Shown here piece after piece: positions 5,817-55,413 of a DNA stretch of 64,000 bases. Where the stretch lies: positions 248,001-312,000 of the IMG/VR virus record IMGVR_UViG_3300040801_001224; one strand, 5' to 3'. The notes under the pieces were generated by a model. The model had not been told where the DNA came from. It did not search any database and saw only the letters and a list, made by a program, of their open reading frames with translations. Position numbers and translations under genes: made by a program. Every line of letters begins with the position of its first letter. Within the stretch, counting starts at the first letter, position 1.

Positions 5817-7694
5817 ATGATTAAAACAGACATAAATGAGGCAGTTAACCTGCACTGTTTATTGAGTGTTACAGATGAGAATGGCATTATTATTGACGCC
5901 AATCGGAAGTTCTGCGAAACCACAGGTTACTCTCTCGAAGAAATCAAAGGCCAGAAGCATTCGATGTTTAAATCGAACCAGCATCCCAAAGCGTTTTACG
6001 AGGATTTATGGAAAACAATATCCACCGGCAACATATGGCAATCTGAGATATGTGACCTAAATAAAGCTGGTGAAGAATGGTGGGCTGAGACTACAATCCT
6101 CCCTCAAATGGATGAGCATGGCAAAATATATCAATATGTGTCAGTTAAAACTCATATAAGAAAACCAACCGCAGAATCTCCTCATCTGCCCAGAAATATC
6201 ATTCGTGATGTTTCAAATGAAATAGTATTATTCAATGAAGATACACTTAGAATCGTTGACGTTAATGCTAAGGTTTGCTGTAACACTGGTTACGTTGAAG
6301 ATGGTGAATTTGAAAAGTTAACACTCCTGGATATCCTTAGCGAGTATGACAACGATGGCATACAAGAAATAGTTTCAAAAGCAAAGTATAGAAATGAAAC
6401 AGTGGAATTTGAGACTGTCGTAGAAAGGAAAGACGGTACATATTATGATGCTCTTGTGAGAGTTCAAAACTACCAAAAAGAAGATAACAATACGTTTGTC
6501 GCTTCTATTAAAGACCTAACACAACAAAAAAAGCATGAAATGGAAATAAGCCAAGCTAAGAAGATGGAAGTACTCAGTGAGGTAACAAGCAACATTGCTC
6601 ATGACTTCAACAATCTTCTTGCCACTATACTTGGTTTTAATAAGCTAATTGAGATGCAGAGTATCAGTGGTGAGTTTGACCGCAATAAAATATTAAATTA
6701 TTCAAAGAATATTGTTGACGCAGGAAATAAATCAAAAGAACTAGTTGCTAGTATGGTTGAGTTCTCTAAGAAAGCTGACAGAGACATGACCAAATACAAA
6801 CTATACGAACTGTCTGGACTAGTTGAAGAATCACTTGATCTGTTGAGTGCTGTACTGCCTAGCGATATCACGCTATCAAAGAAACTTGATTCTAACTTAC
6901 ACGTAAAAACCAATAACATCAAATTACACCAGATTATCATGAATCTATGCTTGAACGCCAAAGACGCTATTGATCAAACTGATGGCACAATTGAAGTTGG
7001 CGTTAGAATATATACTGATGAAATAGACAAATGTACCTCATGTAGAGAAAACTTACAGGGATCTTACATTGAGTTATATGTCAAAGACAACGGCAAGGGG
7101 ATAAGTCAAGAAAAACTAAAAGATATATTCAAGCCATATTATACAACAAAGTCTGATTTGAATGGTACTGGGACAGGCCTTTCTACTGTACATAAAATTA
7201 TGCACGAACATGAAGGACACATAGTAGTTAAGTCTATTCCTCAGGTAGGAAGTGTGTTCAGCATGTTATTCCCGTTTGTCGAACAGCCAGCACATGAAAA
7301 TGATGAAGAGACTGAATATAAACCAATGCCAGGCGGTGGTCGACAACTTCTCATTGTTGATGATCAACCAGCATTAGGACTATTCCTGCAAGATCTCACA
7401 AAGGAACATGGTTATGAGCCAATATATTTTCAGGACGGCAACCAAGCCTATGATTACTATGTTGGCCACCATAACGAAATTTCAGCAGTTATTACTGACA
7501 TGGGTATGCCAGGTATGAATGGCGTCGAGCTCGTAAAGAAAATATTTGAAATTACATCAGACCCGAAGGTTATTGTATGTTCAGGCAATGTTGCTCAGAT
7601 TGACTTCAATGAATTGCCTAAAACCTGTGCTGTGCTACCAAAGCCCATTAACATCAGTGACTTCTTCCAGGAACTTGACAGTTTAATCTATTGA
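5817..7694 (+). CDS. cytoplasmic hybrid sensor histidine kinase (PAS-PAS-HisKA-HATPase-REC)
   Basis: PAS NRKFCETTGYSLEEIKG; H-box AHDFNNLL; N-box QIIMNLCLNAKDA; DNGKGI; YTTK..GTGTGL; receiver IVDDQ, TDMGMPGMNG, PKP. Confidence 0.95.
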   Translation: MIKTDINEAVNLHCLLSVTDENGIIIDANRKFCETTGYSLEEIKGQKHSMFKSNQHPKAFYEDLWKTISTGNIWQSEICDLNKAGEEWWAETTILPQMDEHGKIYQYVSVKTHIRKPTAESPHLPRNIIRDVSNEIVLFNEDTLRIVDVNAKVCCNTGYVEDGEFEKLTLLDILSEYDNDGIQEIVSKAKYRNETVEFETVVERKDGTYYDALVRVQNYQKEDNNTFVASIKDLTQQKKHEMEISQAKKMEVLSEVTSNIAHDFNNLLATILGFNKLIEMQSISGEFDRNKILNYSKNIVDAGNKSKELVASMVEFSKKADRDMTKYKLYELSGLVEESLDLLSAVLPSDITLSKKLDSNLHVKTNNIKLHQIIMNLCLNAKDAIDQTDGTIEVGVRIYTDEIDKCTSCRENLQGSYIELYVKDNGKGISQEKLKDIFKPYYTTKSDLNGTGTGLSTVHKIMHEHEGHIVVKSIPQVGSVFSMLFPFVEQPAHENDEETEYKPMPGGGRQLLIVDDQPALGLFLQDLTKEHGYEPIYFQDGNQAYDYYVGHHNEISAVITDMGMPGMNGVELVKKIFEITSDPKVIVCSGNVAQIDFNELPKTCAVLPKPINISDFFQELDSLIY

Positions 7695-12147: not shown

Positions 12148-12372
12148 ATGTCTACAGAAAAGTAGTAAAAATCCAGAGACCTAGGTCTGTAAGCTAGGGA
12201 GCATTAGAAGAGACATCTTCTATTCGGGGAGGGCAACAAGACTCTTGTGTCGGACACCAATCCTGCTATATTTTACATATTATTCTAAAATAGTGATAAA
12301 TAGGAATAAGCGTAAGATAAGGTGCTACCAACACCTTACCCTACTAAACATAACAATAATTGGAGTATTATT

Positions 12373-13242
12373 ATGCCTACTACTATTTATCAAGACTGGA
12401 ATCCACGTCACTATTATATTATAAGAAATAAAACCTCTGGAAAACTATACATTGGCCAAACTATAAGAATAATTTTAGAAGAATATTTAGGATCTGGAGA
12501 ATATTGGAAATCACACTGTGAACGCAATGGTGGCTATAATAAAGAAAATATTGAGGTATTATACAACAAATACTACGAAGATAAAAATAAAGCACAGCAG
12601 TTTTTAGACGAAGTATATGAGAAAGAAGGAAGATATTGGGATAAAGGAAACACTAAATGGGCAAATTTGATGCCTGAAACTACATCTGCATATGACCCAT
12701 TGGTTATGTCTGAGATACAAAAAAGAAGAATTGAAAATGGAACACATCATTTATTGAAAGAAAATCGCAAGGTTCTACATACTTCGACTGAATTAACTCC
12801 CGAGCAAGCAAGAAGTATGGCGTCAAAAAGAATTGAAGGCGGAACACATAACATTGGATGCGGGAAAGTATATTGTGTGACCAGAACTGGAGAAATTGTC
12901 AATATTGATGTAGATGTATACGAAGCACAGCAAGGAGAAATGTGCGATTGGGATTATGTTAGGCCTAACTCTAATGAGGGTAGAAACCGTACTGGAAAGG
13001 TAAAACCAGAAATATCTGATGAAACAAAGAACAAATTAAGGCACGTTCAAATGAAACAAATTGAGTCAGGTAACCACAACTTAAAAGGTAGTGTCACTTG
13101 CCGCAATAAAAAGGGAAAAGTAGTCCAGGTTCCAAAAGAAATATATTATGCCCAAGTTGGGACATATTGTGATAGAGAATATGTCACAATAGGATCTATT
13201 GAGGGTAGAAGAAGAGCAGGAAAACCTCCGCGCTATCAATAA
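12373..13242 (+). mobile_element. free-standing GIY-YIG (Seg-like) homing endonuclease gene
   Basis: YYIIRNKTSGKLYIGQT, YLGSG, WANL; repeated C-terminal G.HN/HL modules. Confidence 0.85.
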
Positions 13243-13343
13243 AAACTCGTGTAGTGATCCTGAAGAGTTGAATGCTGCCTGGTTAGTCAGCCAGGAATAA
13301 GGAGTAGTTGTAAAACTAAATTTAACTTTTTTATTTTATAAAG

Positions 13344-13536
13344 AGTTTATTTAAATATACTAAGTAGCAAACATCGTTTATATTAAAACCTTGGGTAAGA
13401 TGTTGGACATTAGTTTAATTGGCAGAACGCTTGCTGGCTGGATAAGACCTTAGGAGTCATGACCTATCGTTGCTCCGATAGCTGGCTTGAAGTGGGGTTC
13501 GAGTCCCCGTGCCCACTTAGTATATTTAAATAAACT
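13344..13536 (+). ncRNA. tRNA-like RNA with central insertion, enclosed by a 22-bp perfect inverted repeat
   Basis: 13344-13365 is the exact reverse complement of 13515-13536; D arm GTTTAATTGGCAGAAC and T arm GGGGTTCGAGTCCCC inside. Confidence 0.65.
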
Positions 13537-13542
13537 TTTAAT

Positions 13543-13621
13543 GGCGGCTATAGCTTAACAGGTTTAAAGCCCCTCTCTGTGAAAGAGGAAGATGTCGGGT
13601 CGGATCCGACTAGTCGCCCCA
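13543..13621 (+). tRNA. tRNA-His(GTG)
   Basis: G-1, C73, CCTCT-CTGTGAA-AGAGG, CCA; atypical T loop GTCGGAT. Confidence 0.9.
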
Positions 13622-13627
13622 AACAAC

Positions 13628-13703
13628 GGTAATGTAGCTCAGTGGTAGTAGCACATGATTCATACTCATGCGGTCGTTGGTTCAAATCCAACCATTACCA
13701 CCA
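13628..13703 (+). tRNA. tRNA with CAT anticodon (probably elongator Met)
   Basis: cloverleaf, CATGA-TTCATAC-TCATG, CCA. Confidence 0.9.
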
Positions 13704-13710
13704 AATTTAT

Positions 13711-13783
13711 ACTCTGTTGGAGAAACCGGTTATCTCGTCAGACTTTCAATCTGGAATTACGGGTTCGAGCCCCGTACAGAGTG
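13711..13783 (+). tRNA. tRNA-Glu(TTC), no encoded CCA
   Basis: ACTCTGT/ACAGAGT, TCAGA-CTTTCAA-TCTGG. Confidence 0.9.
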
Positions 13784-13794
13784 CAAACTATTAC

Positions 13795-13823
13795 TTGACA
13801 TTACCACTTTTTAATAGTATAAT
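13795..13823 (+). promoter_or_regulatory. sigma70-type early promoter with CCAC box
   Basis: TTGACA-17-TATAAT. Confidence 0.85.
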
Positions 13824-13842
13824 GTCAATATTAAGAAGTAAG

Positions 13843-14003
13843 TGTGTTTACAGGGTGTGAAGGCATGGGAAACGACATGCCGACAAATTCTCGAATGTCA
13901 GAGATAGGCACTGGTGTTTGAGAATGGATAAAGCCTCACCGCCTAAGAGCCATGAGCTCTATTGAGGTTGCTGGTTAGATTCCAGCCGCACCCTGTAAAC
14001 ACA
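13843..14003 (+). ncRNA. structured RNA with 15-bp closing stem and T-arm-like hairpin
   Basis: 13843-13857 pairs perfectly with 13989-14003; GGCATG/CATGCC; GCTGG-TTAGATT-CCAGC; own promoter. Confidence 0.7.
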
Positions 14004-14216
14004 TTAAGATAATGGTCTAAGCTGACCGTCGCGACAACCGATATGCTAAGTAACTGATTTAGCGGTTAGTGAAACACATAGAGGACAATGCTTCAAGGAG
14101 GATTTCCACTGCCTTGTAAAACAAAACGGTGGAGCCAAATTCAATGGGACCTCCCTGGTGATATATTACGCAAACGTCATAGTTTGTTAGCGCAACCATA
14201 GGCCCGCCAAATTTAA

Positions 14217-14656: not shown

Positions 14657-14743
14657 GTATGTGCGTCAGAGTTGGAGAGCTGAAGCGGACTGTAAACCCG
14701 TTGCCAAAGTGCTGAATAGGTTCGATTCCTATCACATACACCA
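14657..14743 (+). tRNA. tRNA-Tyr(GTA)
   Basis: GCGGA-CTGTAAA-CCCGT, long variable arm, CCA. Confidence 0.92.
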
Positions 14744-14983: not shown

Positions 14984-15058
14984 GGGTCACGGTCTGGGTA
15001 ACCGGGTTGGTCTCCAAAACCGACTGTCTGCCAATTTCGATTATTGGGTGGCCCGCCA
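14984..15058 (+). tRNA. tRNA-Trp(CCA), degenerate D and T arms
   Basis: GGGTCAC/GTGGCCC, TTGGT-CTCCAAA-ACCGA, GCCA. Confidence 0.7.
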
Positions 15059-15220: not shown

Positions 15221-15336
15221 ATTTTTATCTTCGCAGACCTGTAACCATATTCTGCCTCCGCCGTCGACGAAAACAGGATGGGCTGTCGGCGCAAGGTTTG
15301 TAGTTATCCTGACCCAAAACTACATCCATTTTCTGT

Positions 15337-15419
15337 CGCAGGCGAGTGGAACGGATATATAAACCATACCGGGCTCATAACCCGTGTGATACTGGGTTCG
15401 ACTCCCAGGTCTGCTACCA
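15337..15419 (+). tRNA. initiator tRNA-fMet(CAT)
   Basis: unpaired C1, GGG/CCC anticodon stem, enlarged D loop. Confidence 0.85.
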
Positions 15420-16429: not shown

Positions 16430-16505
16430 AGTCCCGTAGCTCAGTCAGGAGAGCGCAGAGCTGATAACTCTGAGGTCGCAGGAGCAAAGCCTGCCGGGAC
16501 TACCA
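16430..16505 (+). tRNA. tRNA-Ile(GAT), atypical T loop AGCAAAG
   Basis: CAGAG-CTGATAA-CTCTG, CCA. Confidence 0.85.
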
Positions 16506-16665: not shown

Positions 16666-16672
16666 ATTTTTT

Positions 16673-16830
16673 TAACTTGTGCCGGAACTGGTATACGGGG
16701 GTGTGGTCTCAGTCAATATGAATAGGGTTGTGAATAAAGAATAGCAACTCTTGTACCCAGGGCGAAAACCACCAGGCGGTAAGCAGTACAACGCAAAACG
16801 CCATTGTAGGTTCAAATCCTACCAAGTTAA
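16673..16830 (+). tRNA. class II (Leu/Ser-type) tRNA gene with about 53-nt insertion in the anticodon loop
   Basis: TAACTTG/CAAGTTA acceptor, Leu-type D arm, GTAGG-TTCAAAT-CCTAC, GTGGT/ACCAC stem enclosing 60 nt. Confidence 0.65.
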
Positions 16831-17798: not shown

Positions 17799-17827
17799 TT
17801 GACAAACCCATTATACTCTAGTATAAT
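17799..17827 (+). promoter_or_regulatory. sigma70-type promoter of the giant ncRNA
   Basis: TTGACA-17-TATAAT. Confidence 0.85.
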
Positions 17828-17833
17828 ACAATT

Positions 17834-18697
17834 CAAAGTTAAGCAATGTCGCATATCGACGATAAGGCACTGAAAGGTGTCGAAGGATGGGAATCCAACA
17901 GCCCATCACCAGCAATGGTAGAGGTATGCAAGCCGAGACTCCAATAAGATATCAGTCATGCTGGTATTAGGAGACAAAGGCTCTCTTAGGGAAGTACCCC
18001 CAGGCCAACGGTGAGGGGCGAAAGTAACAGGTGAAGCTGACTACCTAGGGTTCAAAGAGCTAAGTTGACAGAGTCAAAGGGTAGTGTTACTTGTACAAGA
18101 CTTAGCGGTCGAGTGCTGTGACGCAGTCTTATAGGTAGTGTCCACAACCAGGGCATAATATCTAGAAAGACAACTGAAAAGTAACCTTAGCGGGTGAAAC
18201 AGTATTCGGTGTAGCGTATTCTGTACTCCAAAAGAGTATGGACCGTTTTAGAGGCGCACATCGAGGTTGGTTTAAGTTAGCTCAATTGGTTAGAGCAACG
18301 GCATTTTGGAGCCGTGGGTTCTTGGTTCAATTCCAAGACTTACATACAAAAACGCAAAGACGCCTCTACGTAGTAGTAACGATTAAATGACTTAATTGTC
18401 CGTACACTCCGGTGAATACGGAATAGGTTGAACTCGCAAGGTGACGCCTAGTTTGTTTGAAGTCGCACATTGGATTTAGCGATCCTTAACTGCTCGCAAG
18501 GCAGATGGAACACTGACAGCAGAAACGACTACTATAAAAGTGTAAACGCCAGCACTATAAAATGGGCAGTCATGCTTGATACCGAAAGACGAGACCACGG
18601 TCTGTCCAAGGGGAGTAGGGCTTAACTAGCAAGGTCGCACTTGTTAGGTACGAGTTCCGAATGATCAAGTGTAATACGTCCTAACTCTCAGACGTAT
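17834..18697 (+). ncRNA. probable GOLLD giant ncRNA with embedded tRNA-like domain
   Basis: about 860 nt with no ORF over 60 aa, GC-richer, many hairpins, two CTCGCAAGG motifs, 3' GTGTAAT..CTAACTCTCAG hairpin, tRNA-cluster context; family assignment from memory. Confidence 0.7.
18271..18344 (+). tRNA. tRNA-like domain (Gln TTG-like, 8-nt loop, no CCA) inside the giant RNA
   Basis: GCTCAATTGGTTAGAGC D arm, ACGGC/GCCGT, CTTGG-TTCAATT-CCAAG. Confidence 0.7.
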
Positions 18698-19217: not shown

Positions 19218-20048
19218 ATGATAGGAAAATGCTCATGTGTTATATGTAAAAAACAGTACTCTGGAAAGGGGATACACACCCATGCCGACAGAACTCATGG
19301 TGACGAAGAGACAAAAGCCAAATATAGTTCAGGATATAATGGCAGATACAATGATCCAGAACATATGAAAAACTTAAAAAAGTCATTAAAAAAGTTTTAC
19401 GACAAAGAGTTAGGCCCTAAAAAAACATATAATGTTTCTTGCCATAAGTGTGGTAAAGATTTCGATGTAACCGAAAGAGAAAATCAATTTCCGTCTAAAG
19501 AAAAATATTTCTGTTCTGCAACTTGTAGAAATACTAGGTCGCATACAGAAGCCACAAAACAGAAAATAAAAAAATCACTCAGAAAATATAATGGGCCTGA
19601 AAAAATATATGAAAAGACATGCCCTTGGTGTAGTAAAATTCACACTACTAAGGAAAAAAATAAAAAATTCTGCTCGCGAGATTGTGCCACAAAACATAAA
19701 TCGGCAGAAGCCAGGAAACATCGTTCGGCATATAAGAACTACAGGGCAGATTGCGAATTTAGGTTTAATCTAAAAGATTATCCAGAAGAATTTAATTTCG
19801 CACTTATTGAAGAGCATGGATGGTATAGTGCGGCCAATAGAGGAAATAATCTATATGGTGTGAGCCGAGATCACATAGTAAGTGTGAAATACGGCTTTGA
19901 GAATAATATAGATCCAGCTATTATATCTCATCCAGCAAATTGCCAGTTAATGATACATTCGGACAATGTATCAAAATATACGAATAACGATTTAACAATC
20001 GACCAGCTTTTAGAGAAGATCGAAATCTGGAATAATAAATACATTTAA
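19218..20048 (+). mobile_element. HNH-type homing endonuclease gene with Zn-finger modules
   Basis: CxxC repeats, FCSxxC, SRDHIVSV..HPANCQLMIHSDNVSK. Confidence 0.85.
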
Positions 20049-23599: not shown

Positions 23600-23932
23600 A
23601 TGAAATAGACTAAACCAACATTACGTTTGTGGAAATGGGGAGAAGATAGATTTTCCCATCTTGGATACAAAATATTCACAGTGTTTTACTGTAAGTACTT
23701 TGACTTTTATATATTTAAATATCAACCAGGTGCCTATATACCAAAACACAAAGATCCAGGAAAATGGCATTACAGATTAAATTTTATATTTGGTGGTGAT
23801 GGCAAGTTTATATGTAAAGGTGCGTTAATAAACACCAAGTACATAACACTGTTTAGAGCGGACAAGTATTACCATAAGACAACACCAACTTCCACGACAC
23901 GTTATGTTGTAAGTTTTGGTCTAAAGTTTTGA
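23600..23932 (+). CDS. 2OG-Fe(II) oxygenase-like protein with in-frame TAG at codon 3 from the best start (or TTG start at 23627)
   Basis: IPKHKDPG (HxD), HYRLNF, distal H and RYVVSFG; AAGGA-9nt-ATG AAA TAG in frame. Confidence 0.65.
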
Positions 23933-23999
23933 GCCATTGAGGCCAGCCTAAGGATTCTAAACCCAGAAGGCGCCGGTTCAAGTCCGGCATGGCTCACCA
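23931..23999 (+). tRNA. aberrant 69-nt tRNA-like gene, possible CTA anticodon
   Basis: GAGCCAT/ATGGCTC-ACCA and GCCGG-TTCAAGT-CCGGC perfect; tiny D arm; weak anticodon stem around TTCTAAA. Confidence 0.5.
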
Positions 24000-26398: not shown

Positions 26399-26433
26399 TT
26401 GTTTGTATTGAAGTCTAAGTGATAAATAAAAGT

Positions 26434-27186
26434 ATGGACAAACCATATCACTACGTTTATCGCATCACAAATCTCCTGGAGTCAAAACATTATTATGGCT
26501 CCAGGAGTTCGATAAATAAACCACATGAAGATCTTGGAGTTGTGTATTTTTCGTCAAGTAGTGACGAGCAGTTCAAGAAGCTTCAGGTGTCACAGCCAGA
26601 AATATTTAAATATAAGGTAATAAAATCATTTAGTAGCAGAGAGGATGCGATTTTATTTGAAATAAAGTTACATAAAAGATTCAATGTCAGTAGTGAAGAC
26701 AAGTTCTATAACAAAGCAATTCAGTTGACTTCTGGTTTCAGTAACTACGGAAATAAAGAGATAGGAGACAAAATTTCCGACAAAGCCATCGGCCGTTTTA
26801 AGGGGCAAACTTATGAAGAAATTTACGGTGAAAACAAAGCAACAGAACTAAGGAAATTGCGTTCTGAAAACATGAAAAGTCATTTGAAACAAAATCCAGG
26901 AATCAGAGACGGTGAAAAAAATCCAAATTATGGAAAAAAATGGAATGATGAAAAACGAAAAAAAATGTCTAAAAGACAACAGGGTGAAAACCACACTCAA
27001 TATGGTTACTTTTGGGTTACAGATGGCAAAATAAATAAAAAATTACCGCCGAACTCTGAAATACCCAACGGCTTCACAAAGGGAAGAACTTGGCCTATTA
27101 CACAATGTCCTCACTGTGGTTACGAAGGCCGTGGACCAAATATGAAAAGAATACACTTTGATAGATGTGAAGACAAAAATAAATAA
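26434..27186 (+). mobile_element. GIY-YIG-type homing endonuclease gene with NUMOD3-like repeats
   Basis: YHYVYRITN..KHYYGSR, YFSSS, FYNKA, GEKNPNYGKK. Confidence 0.85.
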
Positions 27187-27284: not shown

Positions 27285-27359
27285 AGTCCGGTAGCTCAGA
27301 GGCAGAGCACCTCGTTTACACCGAGGGGGTCGGGATCTCGGAATTCCCCCGGACTACCA
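27285..27359 (+). tRNA. tRNA-Val(TAC), atypical T loop
   Basis: CCTCG-TTTACAC-CGAGG, CCA; T loop CTCGGAA. Confidence 0.88.
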
Positions 27360-34264: not shown

Positions 34265-35299
34265 TTGACAACTAAACGTATCGGCTTTGCTTGTAAGTAT
34301 ATGGTTGAAGACCAGACGCAAACAAAGAAACTATTAGAAGAACAGCAACGTCCACTCAACACTCGCTCTACGACCAACACGTGGTTACAGAAGCAATCAT
34401 ATGGTGATGCTATAGAACGTTTATACAGCATTGTTAACCATAACTTAGACAGTGTTAAACGCCAGTTAGAATACGTTGATTCTCTGGGCAACGATAACCT
34501 ACGCATGATGCGTATTAGCAGTGACTTACTGCCATTCTATACACACGCTGATTGGCGTGATTTGTACAAGAATCGCACTTTTTTAGACGTTATTGAGCGC
34601 AAATTTGCCGACATTGGTAAATATTCACGTGACAAAGACATACGCCTCAGTTTCCACCCAGGACAATTCACATGCCTTGCCAGTGACAGACCCGAAGTTG
34701 TTGAACGCTCTATTGAAGAGTTTGAATACCATGTTGACATGGTGCGCTGGATGGGTTATGGTCAACGATTCCAAGACTTTAAGTGTAACGTACATATCGG
34801 CGGCCGTTTAGGTCCTGACGGTATTCGTGCCGTTTACCCACGTTTGAGTACAGAGGCTAAGAATGTCATCACGCTCGAGAATGACGAGATGTCATGGGGC
34901 TTAAACAGTGTCCTGTCACTGAGCGATATTATACCGGTGGTTATGGATCTACATCATCATTGGGTACGCAATGGTGAATATATACAGCCAGACGATGACC
35001 GGGTAAAGCAGGTTATAGATTCGTGGCGTGGTGTACGTCCTACGATGCACTATAGTTATAGTAGAGACGAAGCATTGCCCGAAGGTTTTGACCATACCAC
35101 ACTACCGGACATGGCCCAGTTACTTGAGCAAGGACATAAGAAGCAGAAGCTTAGAGCTCACAGTGATTTTTATCCGAACGAGTTGGCTAACCGGTGGGCG
35201 TTGAGCTTCTGGCCTTACTTTGACATTATGTGTGAGTCAAAGTGTAAGAACTTAGCAAGCATTAAATTGTATGAGTTCTGGGAAAATAACATAAAATAA
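34265..35299 (+). CDS. uvsE: UV damage endonuclease (UVDE)
   Basis: RIGFACK, RISSD, RLSFHPGQF, LENDE, DLHHHW, MHYS, HSDF, MCESKCKNLA. Confidence 0.95.
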   Translation: MTTKRIGFACKYMVEDQTQTKKLLEEQQRPLNTRSTTNTWLQKQSYGDAIERLYSIVNHNLDSVKRQLEYVDSLGNDNLRMMRISSDLLPFYTHADWRDLYKNRTFLDVIERKFADIGKYSRDKDIRLSFHPGQFTCLASDRPEVVERSIEEFEYHVDMVRWMGYGQRFQDFKCNVHIGGRLGPDGIRAVYPRLSTEAKNVITLENDEMSWGLNSVLSLSDIIPVVMDLHHHWVRNGEYIQPDDDRVKQVIDSWRGVRPTMHYSYSRDEALPEGFDHTTLPDMAQLLEQGHKKQKLRAHSDFYPNELANRWALSFWPYFDIMCESKCKNLASIKLYEFWENNIK

Positions 35300-53867: not shown

Positions 53868-53916
53868 AGTCCTAAGAATAGACTTGGGCAATCAACCAAT
53901 AAAGGGAGACTTTATT

Positions 53917-55413
53917 ATGAAAAACTTCGAAAACGGCCTACTGAGCCAAATCAGAAACACATATGGTATCGCAAGCGATACTGACTCTTACAAACTATCT
54001 CACCACGTCCAATACAAGTTGGGTGCTGACATGATGATTTCATATATTGAATCACGTGGCGGTGAGTTTGATGAAACTGTATGGTTTGGCCTACAGTTAA
54101 TCATTAAAGAATACTTGATGCAACCTATTACCAGCGAACAAGTTGATAACATGATTGCGTTTGAAAAAACACACCTTGGCGGTAACGTTACTGGTGACTT
54201 GGAAATTGCTCTACGCACTGTAGTCGAAGATTATGATGGCATGTTGCCAATTCGCATACGTGCTGTGGAAGAAGGTTCAATCATCCCAGTTAAAAATGTG
54301 CTGGCAACCATTGAAACCAGTGTTCCAGACCCACGCATCTTTAGCTTAGTTTCTTACTTTGAGACTAAGATCCTACGTGTTTGGGCACCAACTACTGTAG
54401 CCACTATGAGCTACAATATCCGCAAGCATATCCTTGCTGGCTTAGAACTAACGAGTGAAGATCCACAAGGACAAATTCCATTCAAGTTACACGACTTCGG
54501 TGCTCGAGGTGTGAGCTCATTGGAGACTGCGGCATTTGCTGGTGCTGGACACTTAGTTTCATTCCTGGGTAGTGATACAACCATTGCTATCATGGCCGCT
54601 AACTTGGGGTACAATGAAGAAATGAGTGCTTTTAGCATCCCAGCTTCAGAACACAGCACAACCACAATGTGGGGTCCTGATGGTGAGCAAGCGTTCGTAG
54701 ACAACATGTTTAAGAACTACGCTAAAGAAGGAGCTATCTTTGCTACAGTAGCAGACAGCTTTGATATTCTTAACTTCGTAGATCGGATTGCGCCTAAGAT
54801 GAAAGACCGTTTGATTGAGTCTGGTGCTACATGGGTTATACGCCCTGACAGTGGTGATCCAGTACTCACTCCGATTAACGTTGTTGAAAAGCTCGCCGAA
54901 CACTTTGGTTACGAAGTCAATGCTAAGGGCTTTAAAGTTCTTAACAATGTACGTGTTATCCAGGGTGACGGCATCAATATTGATGATGTACGTGACATTG
55001 TTGATATCATGATCCAGAAGGGTTGGAGTATTGACAACATTGCGTTTGGTATGGGCGGTGGCCTGTTACAAAAGAACAACCGTGATACACAGAAGTTCGC
55101 AATGAAATGCTGTGCCGCACGTATTGATGGCGAATGGGTTGATGTGTACAAAGACCCTAAGATCTACGATCCAAACACTTGGGGCGTAATCAACAAGCAG
55201 GGTGACAACGGCTTTAAAACATCCAAGAAAGGACGCTTAGAGCTTATGTACAACTCACAGACTGACACTTGGGAGACTATGCCTAAGAGTATTGCCAACG
55301 ATTACAATGGCAAGTTTGGGTGGACTAAGAAGCTGGAAACAGTATATGAAAACGGCAGATTAGTCAAAGACCTAACCCTGGCGCAGGTCCGTGCCAACGC
55401 CGGAACATTCTAA
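53917..55413 (+). CDS. nadV: nicotinamide phosphoribosyltransferase
   Basis: DTDSYK.SH, LHDFGARG, PASEHS, VADSFD, IRPDSGDP, IQGDG, GMGGGLLQ. Confidence 0.95.
   Translation: MKNFENGLLSQIRNTYGIASDTDSYKLSHHVQYKLGADMMISYIESRGGEFDETVWFGLQLIIKEYLMQPITSEQVDNMIAFEKTHLGGNVTGDLEIALRTVVEDYDGMLPIRIRAVEEGSIIPVKNVLATIETSVPDPRIFSLVSYFETKILRVWAPTTVATMSYNIRKHILAGLELTSEDPQGQIPFKLHDFGARGVSSLETAAFAGAGHLVSFLGSDTTIAIMAANLGYNEEMSAFSIPASEHSTTTMWGPDGEQAFVDNMFKNYAKEGAIFATVADSFDILNFVDRIAPKMKDRLIESGATWVIRPDSGDPVLTPINVVEKLAEHFGYEVNAKGFKVLNNVRVIQGDGINIDDVRDIVDIMIQKGWSIDNIAFGMGGGLLQKNNRDTQKFAMKCCAARIDGEWVDVYKDPKIYDPNTWGVINKQGDNGFKTSKKGRLELMYNSQTDTWETMPKSIANDYNGKFGWTKKLETVYENGRLVKDLTLAQVRANAGTF

What the first reader, a model, noticed from the sequence alone, without database searches (positions are those of the whole stretch)
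13344..13536. 22-bp perfect inverted repeat enclosing a tRNA skeleton with expanded anticodon region
Seen: D arm and T arm in normal order, imperfect acceptor, no CCA. The anticodon arm is replaced by about 60 nt with hairpins (CTATCG/CGATAG, TAGG/CCTA). The 22-bp stem would favour dsRNA-nuclease processing or circularisation.
Basis: seen in the sequence. Interest (0 to 1): 0.65.

Follow-up and report, generated by a model that had tools for sequence, protein, structure and literature searches.

The report
Stem-locked tRNA-like RNA heading phage tRNA array
A jumbo phage carries, just before its first tRNA gene, a tRNA-shaped RNA with a large hairpin where the anticodon arm should be and its ends clamped in a 25-bp helix; it resembles phage T4's long-unexplained 'species 1' RNA and is probably cut out by RNase III rather than used for decoding.

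Summary
The perfect 22-bp inverted repeat (13344-13365 / 13515-13536; 25 bp continuous with RNA pairing) is the longest in the 328-kb jumbo-phage genome. It encloses a tRNA-like body (13404-13516) with canonical D and T arms, a 6/7 acceptor, no CCA and a 64-nt irregular arm in place of the anticodon arm.

It is not a decoding tRNA. It scores 20.8 bits against a gathering score of 29, and all 20 isotypes are encoded elsewhere in the array. It is not YrlA: there is no Ro gene, no GNCGAA motif and the arm order is wrong. It is not a credible intron-containing tRNA either.

A ~97% variant from an independent marine-sediment metagenome changes three stem pairs and keeps all three paired: one compensatory A-U to G-C, and two wobbles. 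That favours an RNA helix over a DNA repeat or random decay. The 3' arm is also the whole 5' leader of tRNA-His.

Best reading: a transcribed leader RNA, excised or uncoupled by host RNase III. It looks like T4 RNAC, whose function is unknown, with no detectable sequence homology. Transcription and cleavage are not shown.

In passing: a second stem-enclosed tRNA-like RNA 300 nt downstream, a GOLLD RNA in the array, and dozens of expanded-middle tRNA-likes in other phage contigs.

The parts
13338..13365 (+). 5' arm of the closing helix (perfect part 13344-13365; continuous pairing from 13341)
   Evidence: in the X4 variant A13354G and A13359G keep pairing
13366..13403 (+). 5' linker between the helix and the tRNA-like body; weak alternative hairpins (13370-13375 / 13399-13404) and an alternative acceptor strand GGGTA 13393-13397
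   Evidence: inference only
13404..13410 (+). acceptor-like 5' strand (TGGACAT)
   Evidence: 6 of 7 pairs with 13509-13515
13413..13428 (+). D arm (4-bp stem, 8-nt loop with GG)
   Evidence: the C13423T change in the variant lies in the loop
13429..13492 (+). expanded central arm replacing the anticodon arm: helix 13433-13440 / 13479-13486, 12-nt internal loop, inner hairpin 13453-13476; no 7-nt anticodon loop
13494..13508 (+). T arm (GGGG / TTCGAGT / CCCC)
13509..13515 (+). acceptor-like 3' strand (GTGCCCA), running straight into the 3' arm of the helix; no CCA
13515..13542 (+). 3' arm of the closing helix; it is also the entire 5' leader of tRNA-His (G-1 at 13543)
   Evidence: T13521C and A13541G in the variant keep pairing
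13544..13621 (+). tRNA-His, first gene of the array, directly abutting the helix
   Evidence: the adjacency is kept in the X4 variant contig
12322..13242 (+). upstream GIY-YIG homing-endonuclease-like ORF (context, probably not part of the RNA)
   Evidence: weak Pfam match; absent from relative G001; the X4 variant is unlike the window left of 13306

Best explanation
Element 1 is a transcribed, non-decoding, tRNA-derived structured RNA at the head of the phage's tRNA operon.

Shown from sequence: its body keeps the parts of a tRNA that give the L-shape elbow and an acceptor-like end (D arm, T arm, imperfect acceptor helix). The anticodon arm is replaced by a 64-nt irregular arm. The two ends of the unit pair into a 25-28-bp A/U-rich helix, and the 3' strand of that helix is the whole 5' leader of tRNA-His.

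Inferred mechanism: in the polycistronic precursor the helix is a substrate for the host's RNase III. A staggered cut releases the roughly 150-170-nt tRNA-like RNA with a stub of helix that protects its ends. The same cut frees a short single-stranded leader so that RNase P can mature tRNA-His (G-1 at 13543).

Inferred, weakest step: the released RNA persists as a small stable RNA of the T4 RNAC (species 1) type. It would act through its tRNA-like shape, as a scaffold or decoy for tRNA-binding factors that displays the central arm, and not by decoding.
For: Helix. It is the longest perfect inverted repeat in the genome; fold z = -4.4. An independent marine-sediment run holds a ~97% variant in which all three altered stem pairs stay paired. 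A13359G with T13521C is compensatory (A-U to G-C). A13354G and A13541G give G.U wobbles, which would be mismatches in a DNA repeat. T13521C alone costs 4.7 kcal/mol; the double change restores it.

Conservation. Only 1 of 113 body positions differs in the variant, and it lies in the D loop. Adjacency to tRNA-His is kept, while the sequence left of 13306 is unlike.

Context. Same strand as all the tRNAs. The 3' arm ends 1-4 nt before G-1 of tRNA-His.

Not a decoder. Rfam tRNA 20.8 bits against 29. No 7-nt anticodon loop. No CCA, whereas 24 of 26 ARAGORN-called tRNAs encode one. All 20 isotypes are present elsewhere, including Tyr, Trp and Val that ARAGORN missed.

Precedent. T4 RNAC in the T4 tRNA cluster, beside tRNA-Arg and the GIY-YIG gene segB, folds with a canonical T arm next to a 3' strand paired to the 5' end and an expanded central hairpin. 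It is transcribed and its role is unknown (PMC3014915, PMC9697503). E. coli RNase III takes part in maturing T4 tRNAs and cuts rRNA precursors at double-stranded stems (PMC4810235).

Repeat of the design. A second stem-enclosed tRNA-like RNA lies 300 nt downstream behind a perfect sigma-70 promoter (19-bp helix, z = -8.1).

Host dependence. The phage has no RNase III of its own, so the enzyme would be the host's.
Against: No RNA data exist: no RNA run holds the locus, so transcription, ends and cleavage are all inferred. No strong promoter lies upstream, so expression would need read-through from the GIY-YIG gene or a weak promoter around 13310-13340.

The covariation rests on one close variant with six changes, assembled as two short low-depth contigs, so linkage of 13359 and 13521 on one molecule is assumed. 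The cloverleaf is 6.5 kcal/mol above the minimum-energy fold and the acceptor register is ambiguous.

The syntenic region of the nearest relative found (G001, 50-70% amino-acid identity) has no such element upstream of tRNA-His. No sequence homology to T4 RNAC or RNAD, to element 2, or to the other expanded tRNA-likes was detected. None of 80 comparable elements has a flanking helix longer than 9 bp.
Confidence: 0.5

Rival explanations
1. The helix is a permanent clamp rather than a cleavage site. It protects the tRNA-like RNA from exonucleases, or sequesters the tRNA-His leader to time or limit tRNA-His maturation, and the whole roughly 200-nt RNA is the functional unit.
For: The same structural evidence as for the best explanation. 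The 3' arm is the tRNA-His leader. Element 2 has a G/C-richer 19-bp helix that looks more like a stable closing stem.
Against: A regular helix of 25 bp or more is a standard RNase III substrate in bacteria, by established knowledge. A clamp would hinder RNase P on the first tRNA of the operon. No data discriminate between the two readings.
Confidence: 0.2
2. A decaying tRNA pseudogene, for example a scar of homing-endonuclease-driven recombination or of an insertion into a tRNA gene. The inverted repeat would be fortuitous or a left-over of the insertion event.
For: Imperfect acceptor, 4-bp T stem, no CCA, sub-threshold tRNA score. It lies directly downstream of a GIY-YIG gene that is absent from relative G001. 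The element is absent at the syntenic place in G001.
Against: The inverted repeat is far beyond chance and is kept by compensatory and wobble changes. The body shows 1 change in 113 nt in the variant. The variant keeps the element although its upstream side differs.
Confidence: 0.12
3. A DNA-level element: terminal inverted repeats of a miniature transposon, a cruciform or protein-binding palindrome, or a recombination or endonuclease target.
For: 22 bp of perfect Watson-Crick complementarity, A/T-rich. Each arm contains the 10-bp palindrome TATTTAAATA. A mobile endonuclease gene lies next door.
Against: Single copy in the genome. Two of the three stem changes in the variant create G.T mismatches at DNA level yet remain RNA pairs. 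No clear target-site duplication in the flanks. The interior is tRNA-like and lies on the tRNA strand.
Confidence: 0.08
4. An intron-containing tRNA-Ile(GAU) that is spliced, or circularised, to give a working tRNA.
Against: The intron would sit inside the anticodon (34/35), too short for a group I intron and not at the canonical 37/38 site. The acceptor is mismatched and there is no CCA. A normal tRNA-Ile(GAU) exists at 16430-16505. There is no RtcB and no Rnl-type ligase in the phage. The same ARAGORN option gives a call on 75 of 80 expanded tRNA-likes, with anticodons that disagree within families.
Confidence: 0.03
5. A YrlA-type bacterial Y RNA that tethers a Ro60 (Rsr) protein.
For: A long terminal helix plus a tRNA-like module is the general Y-RNA layout (PMC4201824).
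Against: No TROVE/Ro gene in the phage. No GNCGAA motif. The arm order is D then T with the ends extending the acceptor, whereas YrlA has T, a closed acceptor-like hairpin, then D (PMC4201824). There is no Rfam YrlA match at E up to 10.
Confidence: 0.03

Closest known systems
Phage T4 RNAC (species 1 RNA) and RNAD, small stable RNAs of the T4 tRNA cluster
   Same: Encoded in a phage tRNA cluster on the tRNA strand, next to a GIY-YIG homing endonuclease gene (segB in T4). RNAC has a canonical T arm directly before a 3' strand that pairs with the 5' end, an expanded irregular central hairpin, no anticodon loop and no CCA. It is sub-threshold on tRNA models. Function is unknown (PMC3014915, PMC9697503).
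   Different: No detectable sequence homology. RNAC lacks a recognisable D arm and has no 25-bp leader-trailer helix. RNAC lies at the end of the T4 cluster, element 1 at the head. RNAC is proven to accumulate; element 1 is not.
RNase III processing stems of rRNA operons and of phage polycistronic precursors (T4 tRNA precursor, T7 early RNA)
   Same: Leader and trailer sequences pair into a helix of at least 20 bp that encloses a structured RNA and is cut by host RNase III, after which other nucleases finish the ends (PMC4810235; T7 from established knowledge).
   Different: Here the enclosed RNA is a 113-nt tRNA-like body, and the trailer strand doubles as the leader of the next tRNA. Cleavage is untested.
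YrlA / bacterial Y RNAs
   Same: A terminal helix plus a tRNA-mimicking module with D-like and T-like arms.
   Different: Permuted topology, a Ro-binding motif and linkage to a TROVE gene define YrlA, and all are absent here (PMC4201824).
tmRNA tRNA-like domain
   Same: Acceptor plus T arm with a large insertion in place of the anticodon arm.
   Different: tmRNA has a CCA end, an alanine identity pair, pseudoknots and a tag reading frame. ARAGORN and Rfam find none of this here. A separate tmRNA candidate lies elsewhere in the genome.
Engineered 'tRNA scaffold' RNAs (anticodon arm replaced by a cargo RNA)
   Same: The same design principle: the acceptor, D and T arms are kept and the cargo sits in the anticodon-arm position (my knowledge of the method; cf. 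PMC3753655).
   Different: That scaffold is man-made. Whether phages use the principle naturally is the open question raised by the wider class seen here.

Membership tests
tRNA (Rfam RF00005) | Score at or above the curated gathering score (29 bits) | tested here: not met
   20.8 bits, seen only in a 213-nt search. No hit in the 1.5-kb or whole-window scans. A model built from the phage's own tRNAs finds only the T arm, 10.8 bits.
tRNA (Rfam RF00005) | D arm and T arm with conserved loop nucleotides in normal order | tested here: met
tRNA (Rfam RF00005) | 5-bp anticodon stem with a 7-nt loop | tested here: not met
   A 64-nt irregular arm takes its place; its terminal loop is 4 nt.
tRNA (Rfam RF00005) | 7-bp acceptor stem and a 3' end that can carry CCA (encoded in this phage's tRNAs) | tested here: not met
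   6 of 7 pairs with an A.C mismatch. No CCA, against 24 of 26 called tRNAs with one. The phage has no CCA-adding enzyme. The 3' side is locked in the helix.
YrlA (Rfam RF02553) | Lies within about 4 kb of a Ro60/TROVE gene on the same strand | tested here: not met
   No TROVE match in the 328-kb genome; criterion from PMC4201824.
YrlA (Rfam RF02553) | GNCGAA(N)G Rsr-binding motif near the 5' end | tested here: not met
   No G-N-CGAA in 13338-13542.
YrlA (Rfam RF02553) | Permuted order: T arm, closed acceptor-like hairpin, D arm | tested here: not met
   The order here is D, central arm, T, and the ends extend the acceptor.
YrlA (Rfam RF02553) | Match to the covariance model | tested here: not met
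   No match at E up to 10.
T4 RNAC-like tRNA-cluster stable RNA (no curated model exists) | Encoded within a phage tRNA cluster on the tRNA strand | tested here: met
T4 RNAC-like tRNA-cluster stable RNA (no curated model exists) | Canonical T arm next to a 3' strand that pairs with the 5' part; expanded central hairpin; no anticodon loop; no CCA | tested here: met
   Compare the folds.
T4 RNAC-like tRNA-cluster stable RNA (no curated model exists) | Sequence homology to RNAC or RNAD | tested here: not met
   The best local alignment lies in non-equivalent A/T-rich stretches; 9 of 300 shuffles reach it. Rfam has no family for them.
T4 RNAC-like tRNA-cluster stable RNA (no curated model exists) | Accumulates as a discrete stable RNA during infection | not testable with these tools
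   No RNA runs hold the locus.
RNase III processing helix | Regular dsRNA helix of about 20 bp or more formed by flanking sequences | tested here: met
   25 bp continuous, kept by covariation.
RNase III processing helix | rnc-dependent staggered cleavage | not testable with these tools
   Needs an experiment. The phage has no RNase III of its own.
Intron-containing tRNA | Intron at a recognised position with a matching splicing mechanism (group I fold, or bulge-helix-bulge with endonuclease and ligase) | tested here: not met
   A 41-nt insert at 34/35. No group I match in Rfam. No RtcB or Rnl-type ligase. Intron-mode calls are arbitrary on 75 of 80 similar elements.
Miniature inverted-repeat transposable element | Several copies per genome, with target-site duplication | tested here: not met
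   Single copy. No clear duplication in the flanks.
Expanded-middle tRNA-like 'family 2' of phage contigs (defined here) | Sequence or profile similarity of the central module | tested here: not met
   An nhmmer profile of the family-2 middle gives no hit on element 1 at E up to 100. Only the general layout (helix, 5' internal loop, hairpin) is alike.

The most novel reading that the evidence does not exclude
Element 1, element 2, T4 RNAC and the dozens of expanded-middle tRNA-likes in phage tRNA arrays are instances of one undescribed strategy. Phages use the tRNA frame (acceptor, D and T arms) as a natural scaffold. The scaffold recruits host tRNA-processing and stabilising machinery to display non-decoding structured RNA modules. 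Element 1 would be a variant whose release is gated by an RNase III helix that is coupled to maturation of the first tRNA.
Probability: 0.3. Interest if true: 0.75.

Novelty: new variant of a known kind. Interest (0 to 1): 0.5.

Why it matters
T4's RNAC and RNAD have been known as stable RNAs of the tRNA cluster for decades, with no assigned function (PMC3014915, PMC9697503). Three findings here suggest these are not T4 oddities but a recurrent and overlooked class of phage non-coding RNA that standard tRNA finders skip:

- a structurally similar, selection-maintained RNA in an unrelated jumbo phage;
- a second one beside it;
- at least 80 distinct tRNA-framed RNAs with structured inserts in other phage contigs, 43 of them with tRNA genes within 1.5 kb on the same strand. 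One sequence family among them shows covariation in its acceptor stem, T arm and an inner hairpin.

The 25-bp helix that doubles as the tRNA-His leader gives a concrete, cheaply testable processing hypothesis (rnc and RNase P dependence). It could serve as a handle to study how large phage tRNA operons are matured.

Tried and rejected
Homologue hunts with no result:
- blastn of 13000-14000 against 50,697 phage records found tRNA hits only.
- Exact and gapped patterns from element 1 in IMG/VR found nothing.
- The 487-aa upstream ORF as an anchor found no relatives.
- The exonuclease anchor found relative G001, whose syntenic region lacks both the element and the GIY-YIG gene.

Other checks:
- YrlA / Ro: rejected.
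- Splicing or circularisation: no RtcB, no Rnl ligase; ARAGORN intron calls shown to be arbitrary.
- Missing-isotype idea: rejected. Tyr, Trp and Val, which ARAGORN misses, are present.
- Membership in 'family 2' of expanded tRNA-likes looked plausible by eye (shared order of CCUU, hairpin, CGA) but was not supported by a profile search or by MAFFT.
- Paralogy of elements 1 and 2 looked plausible by eye; the score equals that of shuffles.
- My 'element 3' (15233-15419) turned out to be an ordinary CAU-anticodon tRNA at 15338-15415 plus spacer.
- 'Element 4' (16672-16828) has a T arm and a 7-bp closure, but its fold z is 0, so it remains weak.
- TATTTAAATA as a repeated promoter motif: only 5 copies in the genome, so not supported.
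- RNA expression: no RNA run holds the locus.

Left out: locus L090, a contig of a human-gut metagenome returned by the pattern scan, was left out of all analyses.

Full report
**Where the window lies.** The window is bases 248001-312000 of a 328,096-bp viral record with direct terminal repeats. By its 5'-3' exonuclease it is a distant relative (about 45-50% amino-acid identity) of PA5oct-like and Rak2-like jumbo phages. It was assembled from a microbial-mat metagenome. All genes around the finding are on the + strand. From 13544 to about 28235 lies a large tRNA array, interspersed with small ORFs and homing-endonuclease genes.

Positions 13344-13365 and 13515-13536 are perfectly complementary. 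With RNA pairing rules the helix is 25 bp, 13341-13365 / 13515-13539. After an A.A mismatch there are two more pairs. In a scan of the whole genome for perfect inverted repeats with arms up to 450 nt apart, this is the longest; the runner-up is 15 bp. The element occurs once in the genome. Between the arms lie, in tRNA order:
- an acceptor-like 5' strand, 13404-13410;
- a D arm, 13413-13428;
- a 64-nt stretch, 13429-13492;
- a T arm, 13494-13508;
- an acceptor-like 3' strand, 13509-13515, which pairs 6 of 7 with the 5' strand and runs without a break into the 3' arm of the long helix.

There is no CCA. The Rfam tRNA model aligns over 13404-13516 at 20.8 bits, below its gathering score of 29. 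It places a 50-nt insertion at the anticodon loop.

**It is not a decoding tRNA.**
- Default ARAGORN, the Rfam scans of larger stretches, and a covariance model built from 20 of the phage's own tRNAs do not call it. The last sees only the T arm.
- The central arm folds as an 8-bp helix, a 12-nt internal loop and a hairpin with a 4-nt loop, so there is no anticodon loop.
- 24 of the 26 tRNAs that ARAGORN calls encode CCA; this element does not. The phage has no CCA-adding enzyme.
- The three isotypes that seemed missing are present. They were simply missed by ARAGORN: Tyr at 14657-14740, Trp at 14984-15055 and Val at 27285-27356.
The same option makes a call on 75 of 80 comparable elements from other phages, with anticodons that disagree within sequence families. 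That call therefore carries no weight. A normal tRNA-Ile(GAU) exists at 16430-16505.

**The helix is kept by RNA rules.** One independent marine-sediment run (X4) holds a roughly 97% variant as two short contigs, 13306-13486 and 13488-13623. It differs at six listed places:

| Change | Location | Partner | Effect |
|---|---|---|---|
| A13354G | 5' arm | T13526 | G.U wobble |
| A13359G | 5' arm | 13521 | with T13521C: A-U becomes G-C |
| T13521C | 3' arm | 13359 | with A13359G: A-U becomes G-C |
| A13541G | outer 3' arm | T13339 | U.G wobble |
| G13367A | linker | none | - |
| C13423T | D loop | none | - |

All three altered pairs therefore remain pairs. Two of them would be G.T mismatches in a DNA-level repeat. 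T13521C alone would cost 4.7 kcal/mol, and the double change restores the energy. By my rough estimate, the chance that one of five other changes hits the exact partner with the right base is about 1%. The tRNA-like body has 1 change in 113 nt. The variant keeps the element joined to tRNA-His, but is unlike the window left of 13306, the side of the GIY-YIG gene.

Limits of this evidence: it is one close variant; the contigs have low depth; and the two partner changes lie on different contigs, so I assume they come from one genome.

**Coupling to tRNA-His.** The continuous helix ends at 13539 and the extended pairing at 13542. G-1 of tRNA-His is 13543 and G+1 is 13544. The 3' arm is therefore the entire 5' leader of the first tRNA of the array. 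Unless the helix is opened or cut, RNase P must work on a leader that is buried in 25 bp of duplex.

**Mechanism proposed.** The phage has no RNase III gene, so the enzyme would be the host's. E. coli RNase III cuts rRNA precursors at such leader-trailer stems and takes part in maturing T4 tRNAs (PMC4810235). I therefore read the helix as an RNase III site. The cut would release the tRNA-like RNA with a protective stub and at the same time expose the tRNA-His leader.

What is shown: the helix, its conservation, and its overlap with the leader. What is inferred: transcription, cleavage, and the fate of the released RNA. No RNA run holds the locus. No strong sigma-70 promoter lies directly upstream.

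**Closest known thing.** In T4 the tRNA cluster contains the GIY-YIG gene segB and, next to tRNA-Arg, two small stable RNAs: RNAD (119 nt) and RNAC (139 nt). RNAC folds with these features:
- a canonical T arm (CCGGG / UUCGAAU / CCCGG) directly before a 3' strand that pairs with the 5' end;
- a roughly 60-nt irregular central hairpin;
- a second hairpin;
- no anticodon loop and no CCA, with z = -4.6.

My tRNA model hits it at 16.7 bits. Rfam has no family for it. Both RNAs are transcribed and their roles are unknown (PMC3014915, PMC9697503). Element 1 has the same kind of anatomy and the same kind of neighbourhood. It keeps a D arm, carries the long helix and shows no sequence homology. I file it as working like an RNAC-type RNA, not as a homologue.

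**YrlA is rejected.** The defining features are linkage to a TROVE gene, the GNCGAA motif, and the permuted order of T arm, closed acceptor hairpin, D arm (PMC4201824). None is met. The Rfam model does not match.

**Other rivals.**
- A decaying pseudogene fits the imperfect acceptor and the absence of the element from relative G001. It does not fit the pair-preserving changes and the conserved body.
- A DNA-level repeat fits the perfect A/T-rich arms and the mobile neighbour. It does not fit the single copy or the wobble changes.
- A permanent clamp, rather than a cleavage site, cannot be excluded.

**Weak points of the tRNA-like fold.** The hand-built cloverleaf of the whole element is -56.8 kcal/mol against -63.3 for the minimum-energy fold. 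For the body alone the values are -29.1 against -31.6. A competing 5-bp closure, 13393-13397 / 13510-13514, uses nearly the same 3' strand. The robust parts in all folds are the long helix, the central arm and the T arm.

**Context that changes the picture.**
1. 300 nt downstream, behind a perfect TTGACA-17-TATAAT promoter (13795-13823), lies a second stem-enclosed RNA, 13841-14005. It has a 19-bp closing helix that contains the genome's second-longest perfect inverted repeat. Its innermost 7 bp look like an acceptor stem abutting a T arm (GCTGG / TTAGATT / CCAGC). Three further hairpins lie in the D, anticodon and variable positions. z = -8.1, and there is no Rfam match. It shows no sequence similarity to element 1.
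2. A GOLLD RNA match (81.8 bits, E 2e-20, below the gathering score of 150) spans 18206-18694 behind another perfect promoter. It contains the odd tRNA with an 8-nt anticodon loop.
3. Pattern scans for a tRNA D loop and T loop 58-85 nt apart returned 120 or more metagenome hits and 111 viral-contig hits. After parsing, 80 distinct elements have at least 6 of 7 acceptor pairs, canonical D and T arms, and a 55-82-nt middle.
   - 43 of these have tRNA genes within 1.5 kb, always on the same strand.
   - Only 4 are called by default ARAGORN, and 11 encode CCA.
   - A few of the 80 are tandem or truncated tRNA duplicates.
   - Clustering of the middles gave one group of 14, two groups of 3, four pairs and 52 singletons.
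   - By eye they share a few recurring sequence types. One has a hairpin followed by ACAGCAA. For another, covariation was found in the acceptor stem, the T arm and an inner hairpin.
   - None has a flanking helix longer than 9 bp.

Element 1 shares the layout of this class but not the sequence of any family tested.

**Verdict.** The finding is real, it is more than chance, and its helix shows signs of selection at the RNA level. It is best described as a new variant of the poorly understood RNAC kind of phage tRNA-cluster RNA. What sets it apart is an RNase III-type helix that is coupled to the first tRNA. Function beyond processing is unknown. The wider class deserves a dedicated study.

**Housekeeping.**
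- Locus L090, a human-gut metagenome contig, was not analysed.
- No alternative genetic code was used.

Noticed in passing
window 13795-14005 (+): Element 2: a perfect sigma-70 promoter (13795-13823) followed by a 165-nt RNA candidate (13841-14005). It has a 19-bp closing helix, four hairpins, a T-arm-like last hairpin (13970-13986) abutting an acceptor-like inner helix, z = -8.1 and no Rfam match. It contains the second-longest perfect inverted repeat of the genome.
   Followed up: partly
window 18206-18694 (+): GOLLD RNA (RF02032) match over the whole model: 81.8 bits (gathering score 150), E 2e-20. It lies behind a perfect promoter at 17799-17827. The 'tRNA-???' with an 8-nt anticodon loop (18270-18347, no CCA) lies inside it.
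   Followed up: partly
window 14657-14740, 14984-15055, 15338-15415, 23931-23996, 27285-27356 (+): Five tRNA genes missed by default ARAGORN but found by covariance models: Tyr(GUA), Trp(CCA) with an odd T arm, a third CAU-anticodon tRNA, a short tRNA whose loop reads CUA (amber-suppressor-like), and Val(UAC). With them the array covers all 20 amino acids, about 31 tRNAs in all.
   Followed up: partly
window 16672-16828 (+): Element 4: an orphan T arm (16806-16822) closed by a 7-bp acceptor-like helix (TAACTTG / CAAGTTA) around about 140 nt, with no CCA. Fold z is about 0, so the evidence is weak.
   Followed up: partly
G000:C1:124149-124495 (outside the window): ARAGORN calls a permuted tmRNA with tag peptide ENDEIFALAA. 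An orphan T arm lies at 124214. Not checked with Rfam.
   Followed up: no
L004:3076-3195, L043:2130-2252, L085:2358-2478, L033:441-558, L210:769-885, L055:1132-1258 and about 75 more loci: A widespread class of phage-contig tRNA-likes with perfect acceptor, D and T arms but a structured 55-82-nt middle. Several recurring sequence types appear, for example a hairpin followed by ACAGCAA, or a helix / CUU-hairpin-CGAAU / helix module followed by GUUAUCG and a hairpin. Most are not called by ARAGORN, and intron-mode anticodons are inconsistent within a type. I found no description of them in the papers searched.
   Followed up: partly
L007:896-1006 (-) (363-kb phage contig): An uncalled 111-nt tRNA-like inside a tRNA array. 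It has the same 18-nt D arm as element 1, a perfect acceptor with two G.U pairs, an encoded ACCA, an 8-nt loop hairpin and a 44-nt variable region. Rfam tRNA score is 25.2 bits.
   Followed up: partly
L030:2300-2550 (-) (relative G001): In the nearest relative's tRNA array, a roughly 190-nt gap element ends in a T arm, an acceptor-like strand and ACCA. It may be another expanded tRNA-like with a much larger insert.
   Followed up: no
window 12322-13242, 19218-20048, 26419-27186 (+): Three homing-endonuclease-like genes are scattered in the tRNA array: GIY-YIG, an HNH-like PHROG family, and GIY-YIG with NUMOD3 (SegE-like). This echoes segB in the T4 tRNA cluster.
   Followed up: partly
window 5817-7694, 34265-35299, 53884-55413 (+): Unusual cargo for a phage: a PAS / histidine-kinase / receiver hybrid sensor kinase, a UvdE UV-damage endonuclease, and a nicotinamide phosphoribosyltransferase.
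   Followed up: no
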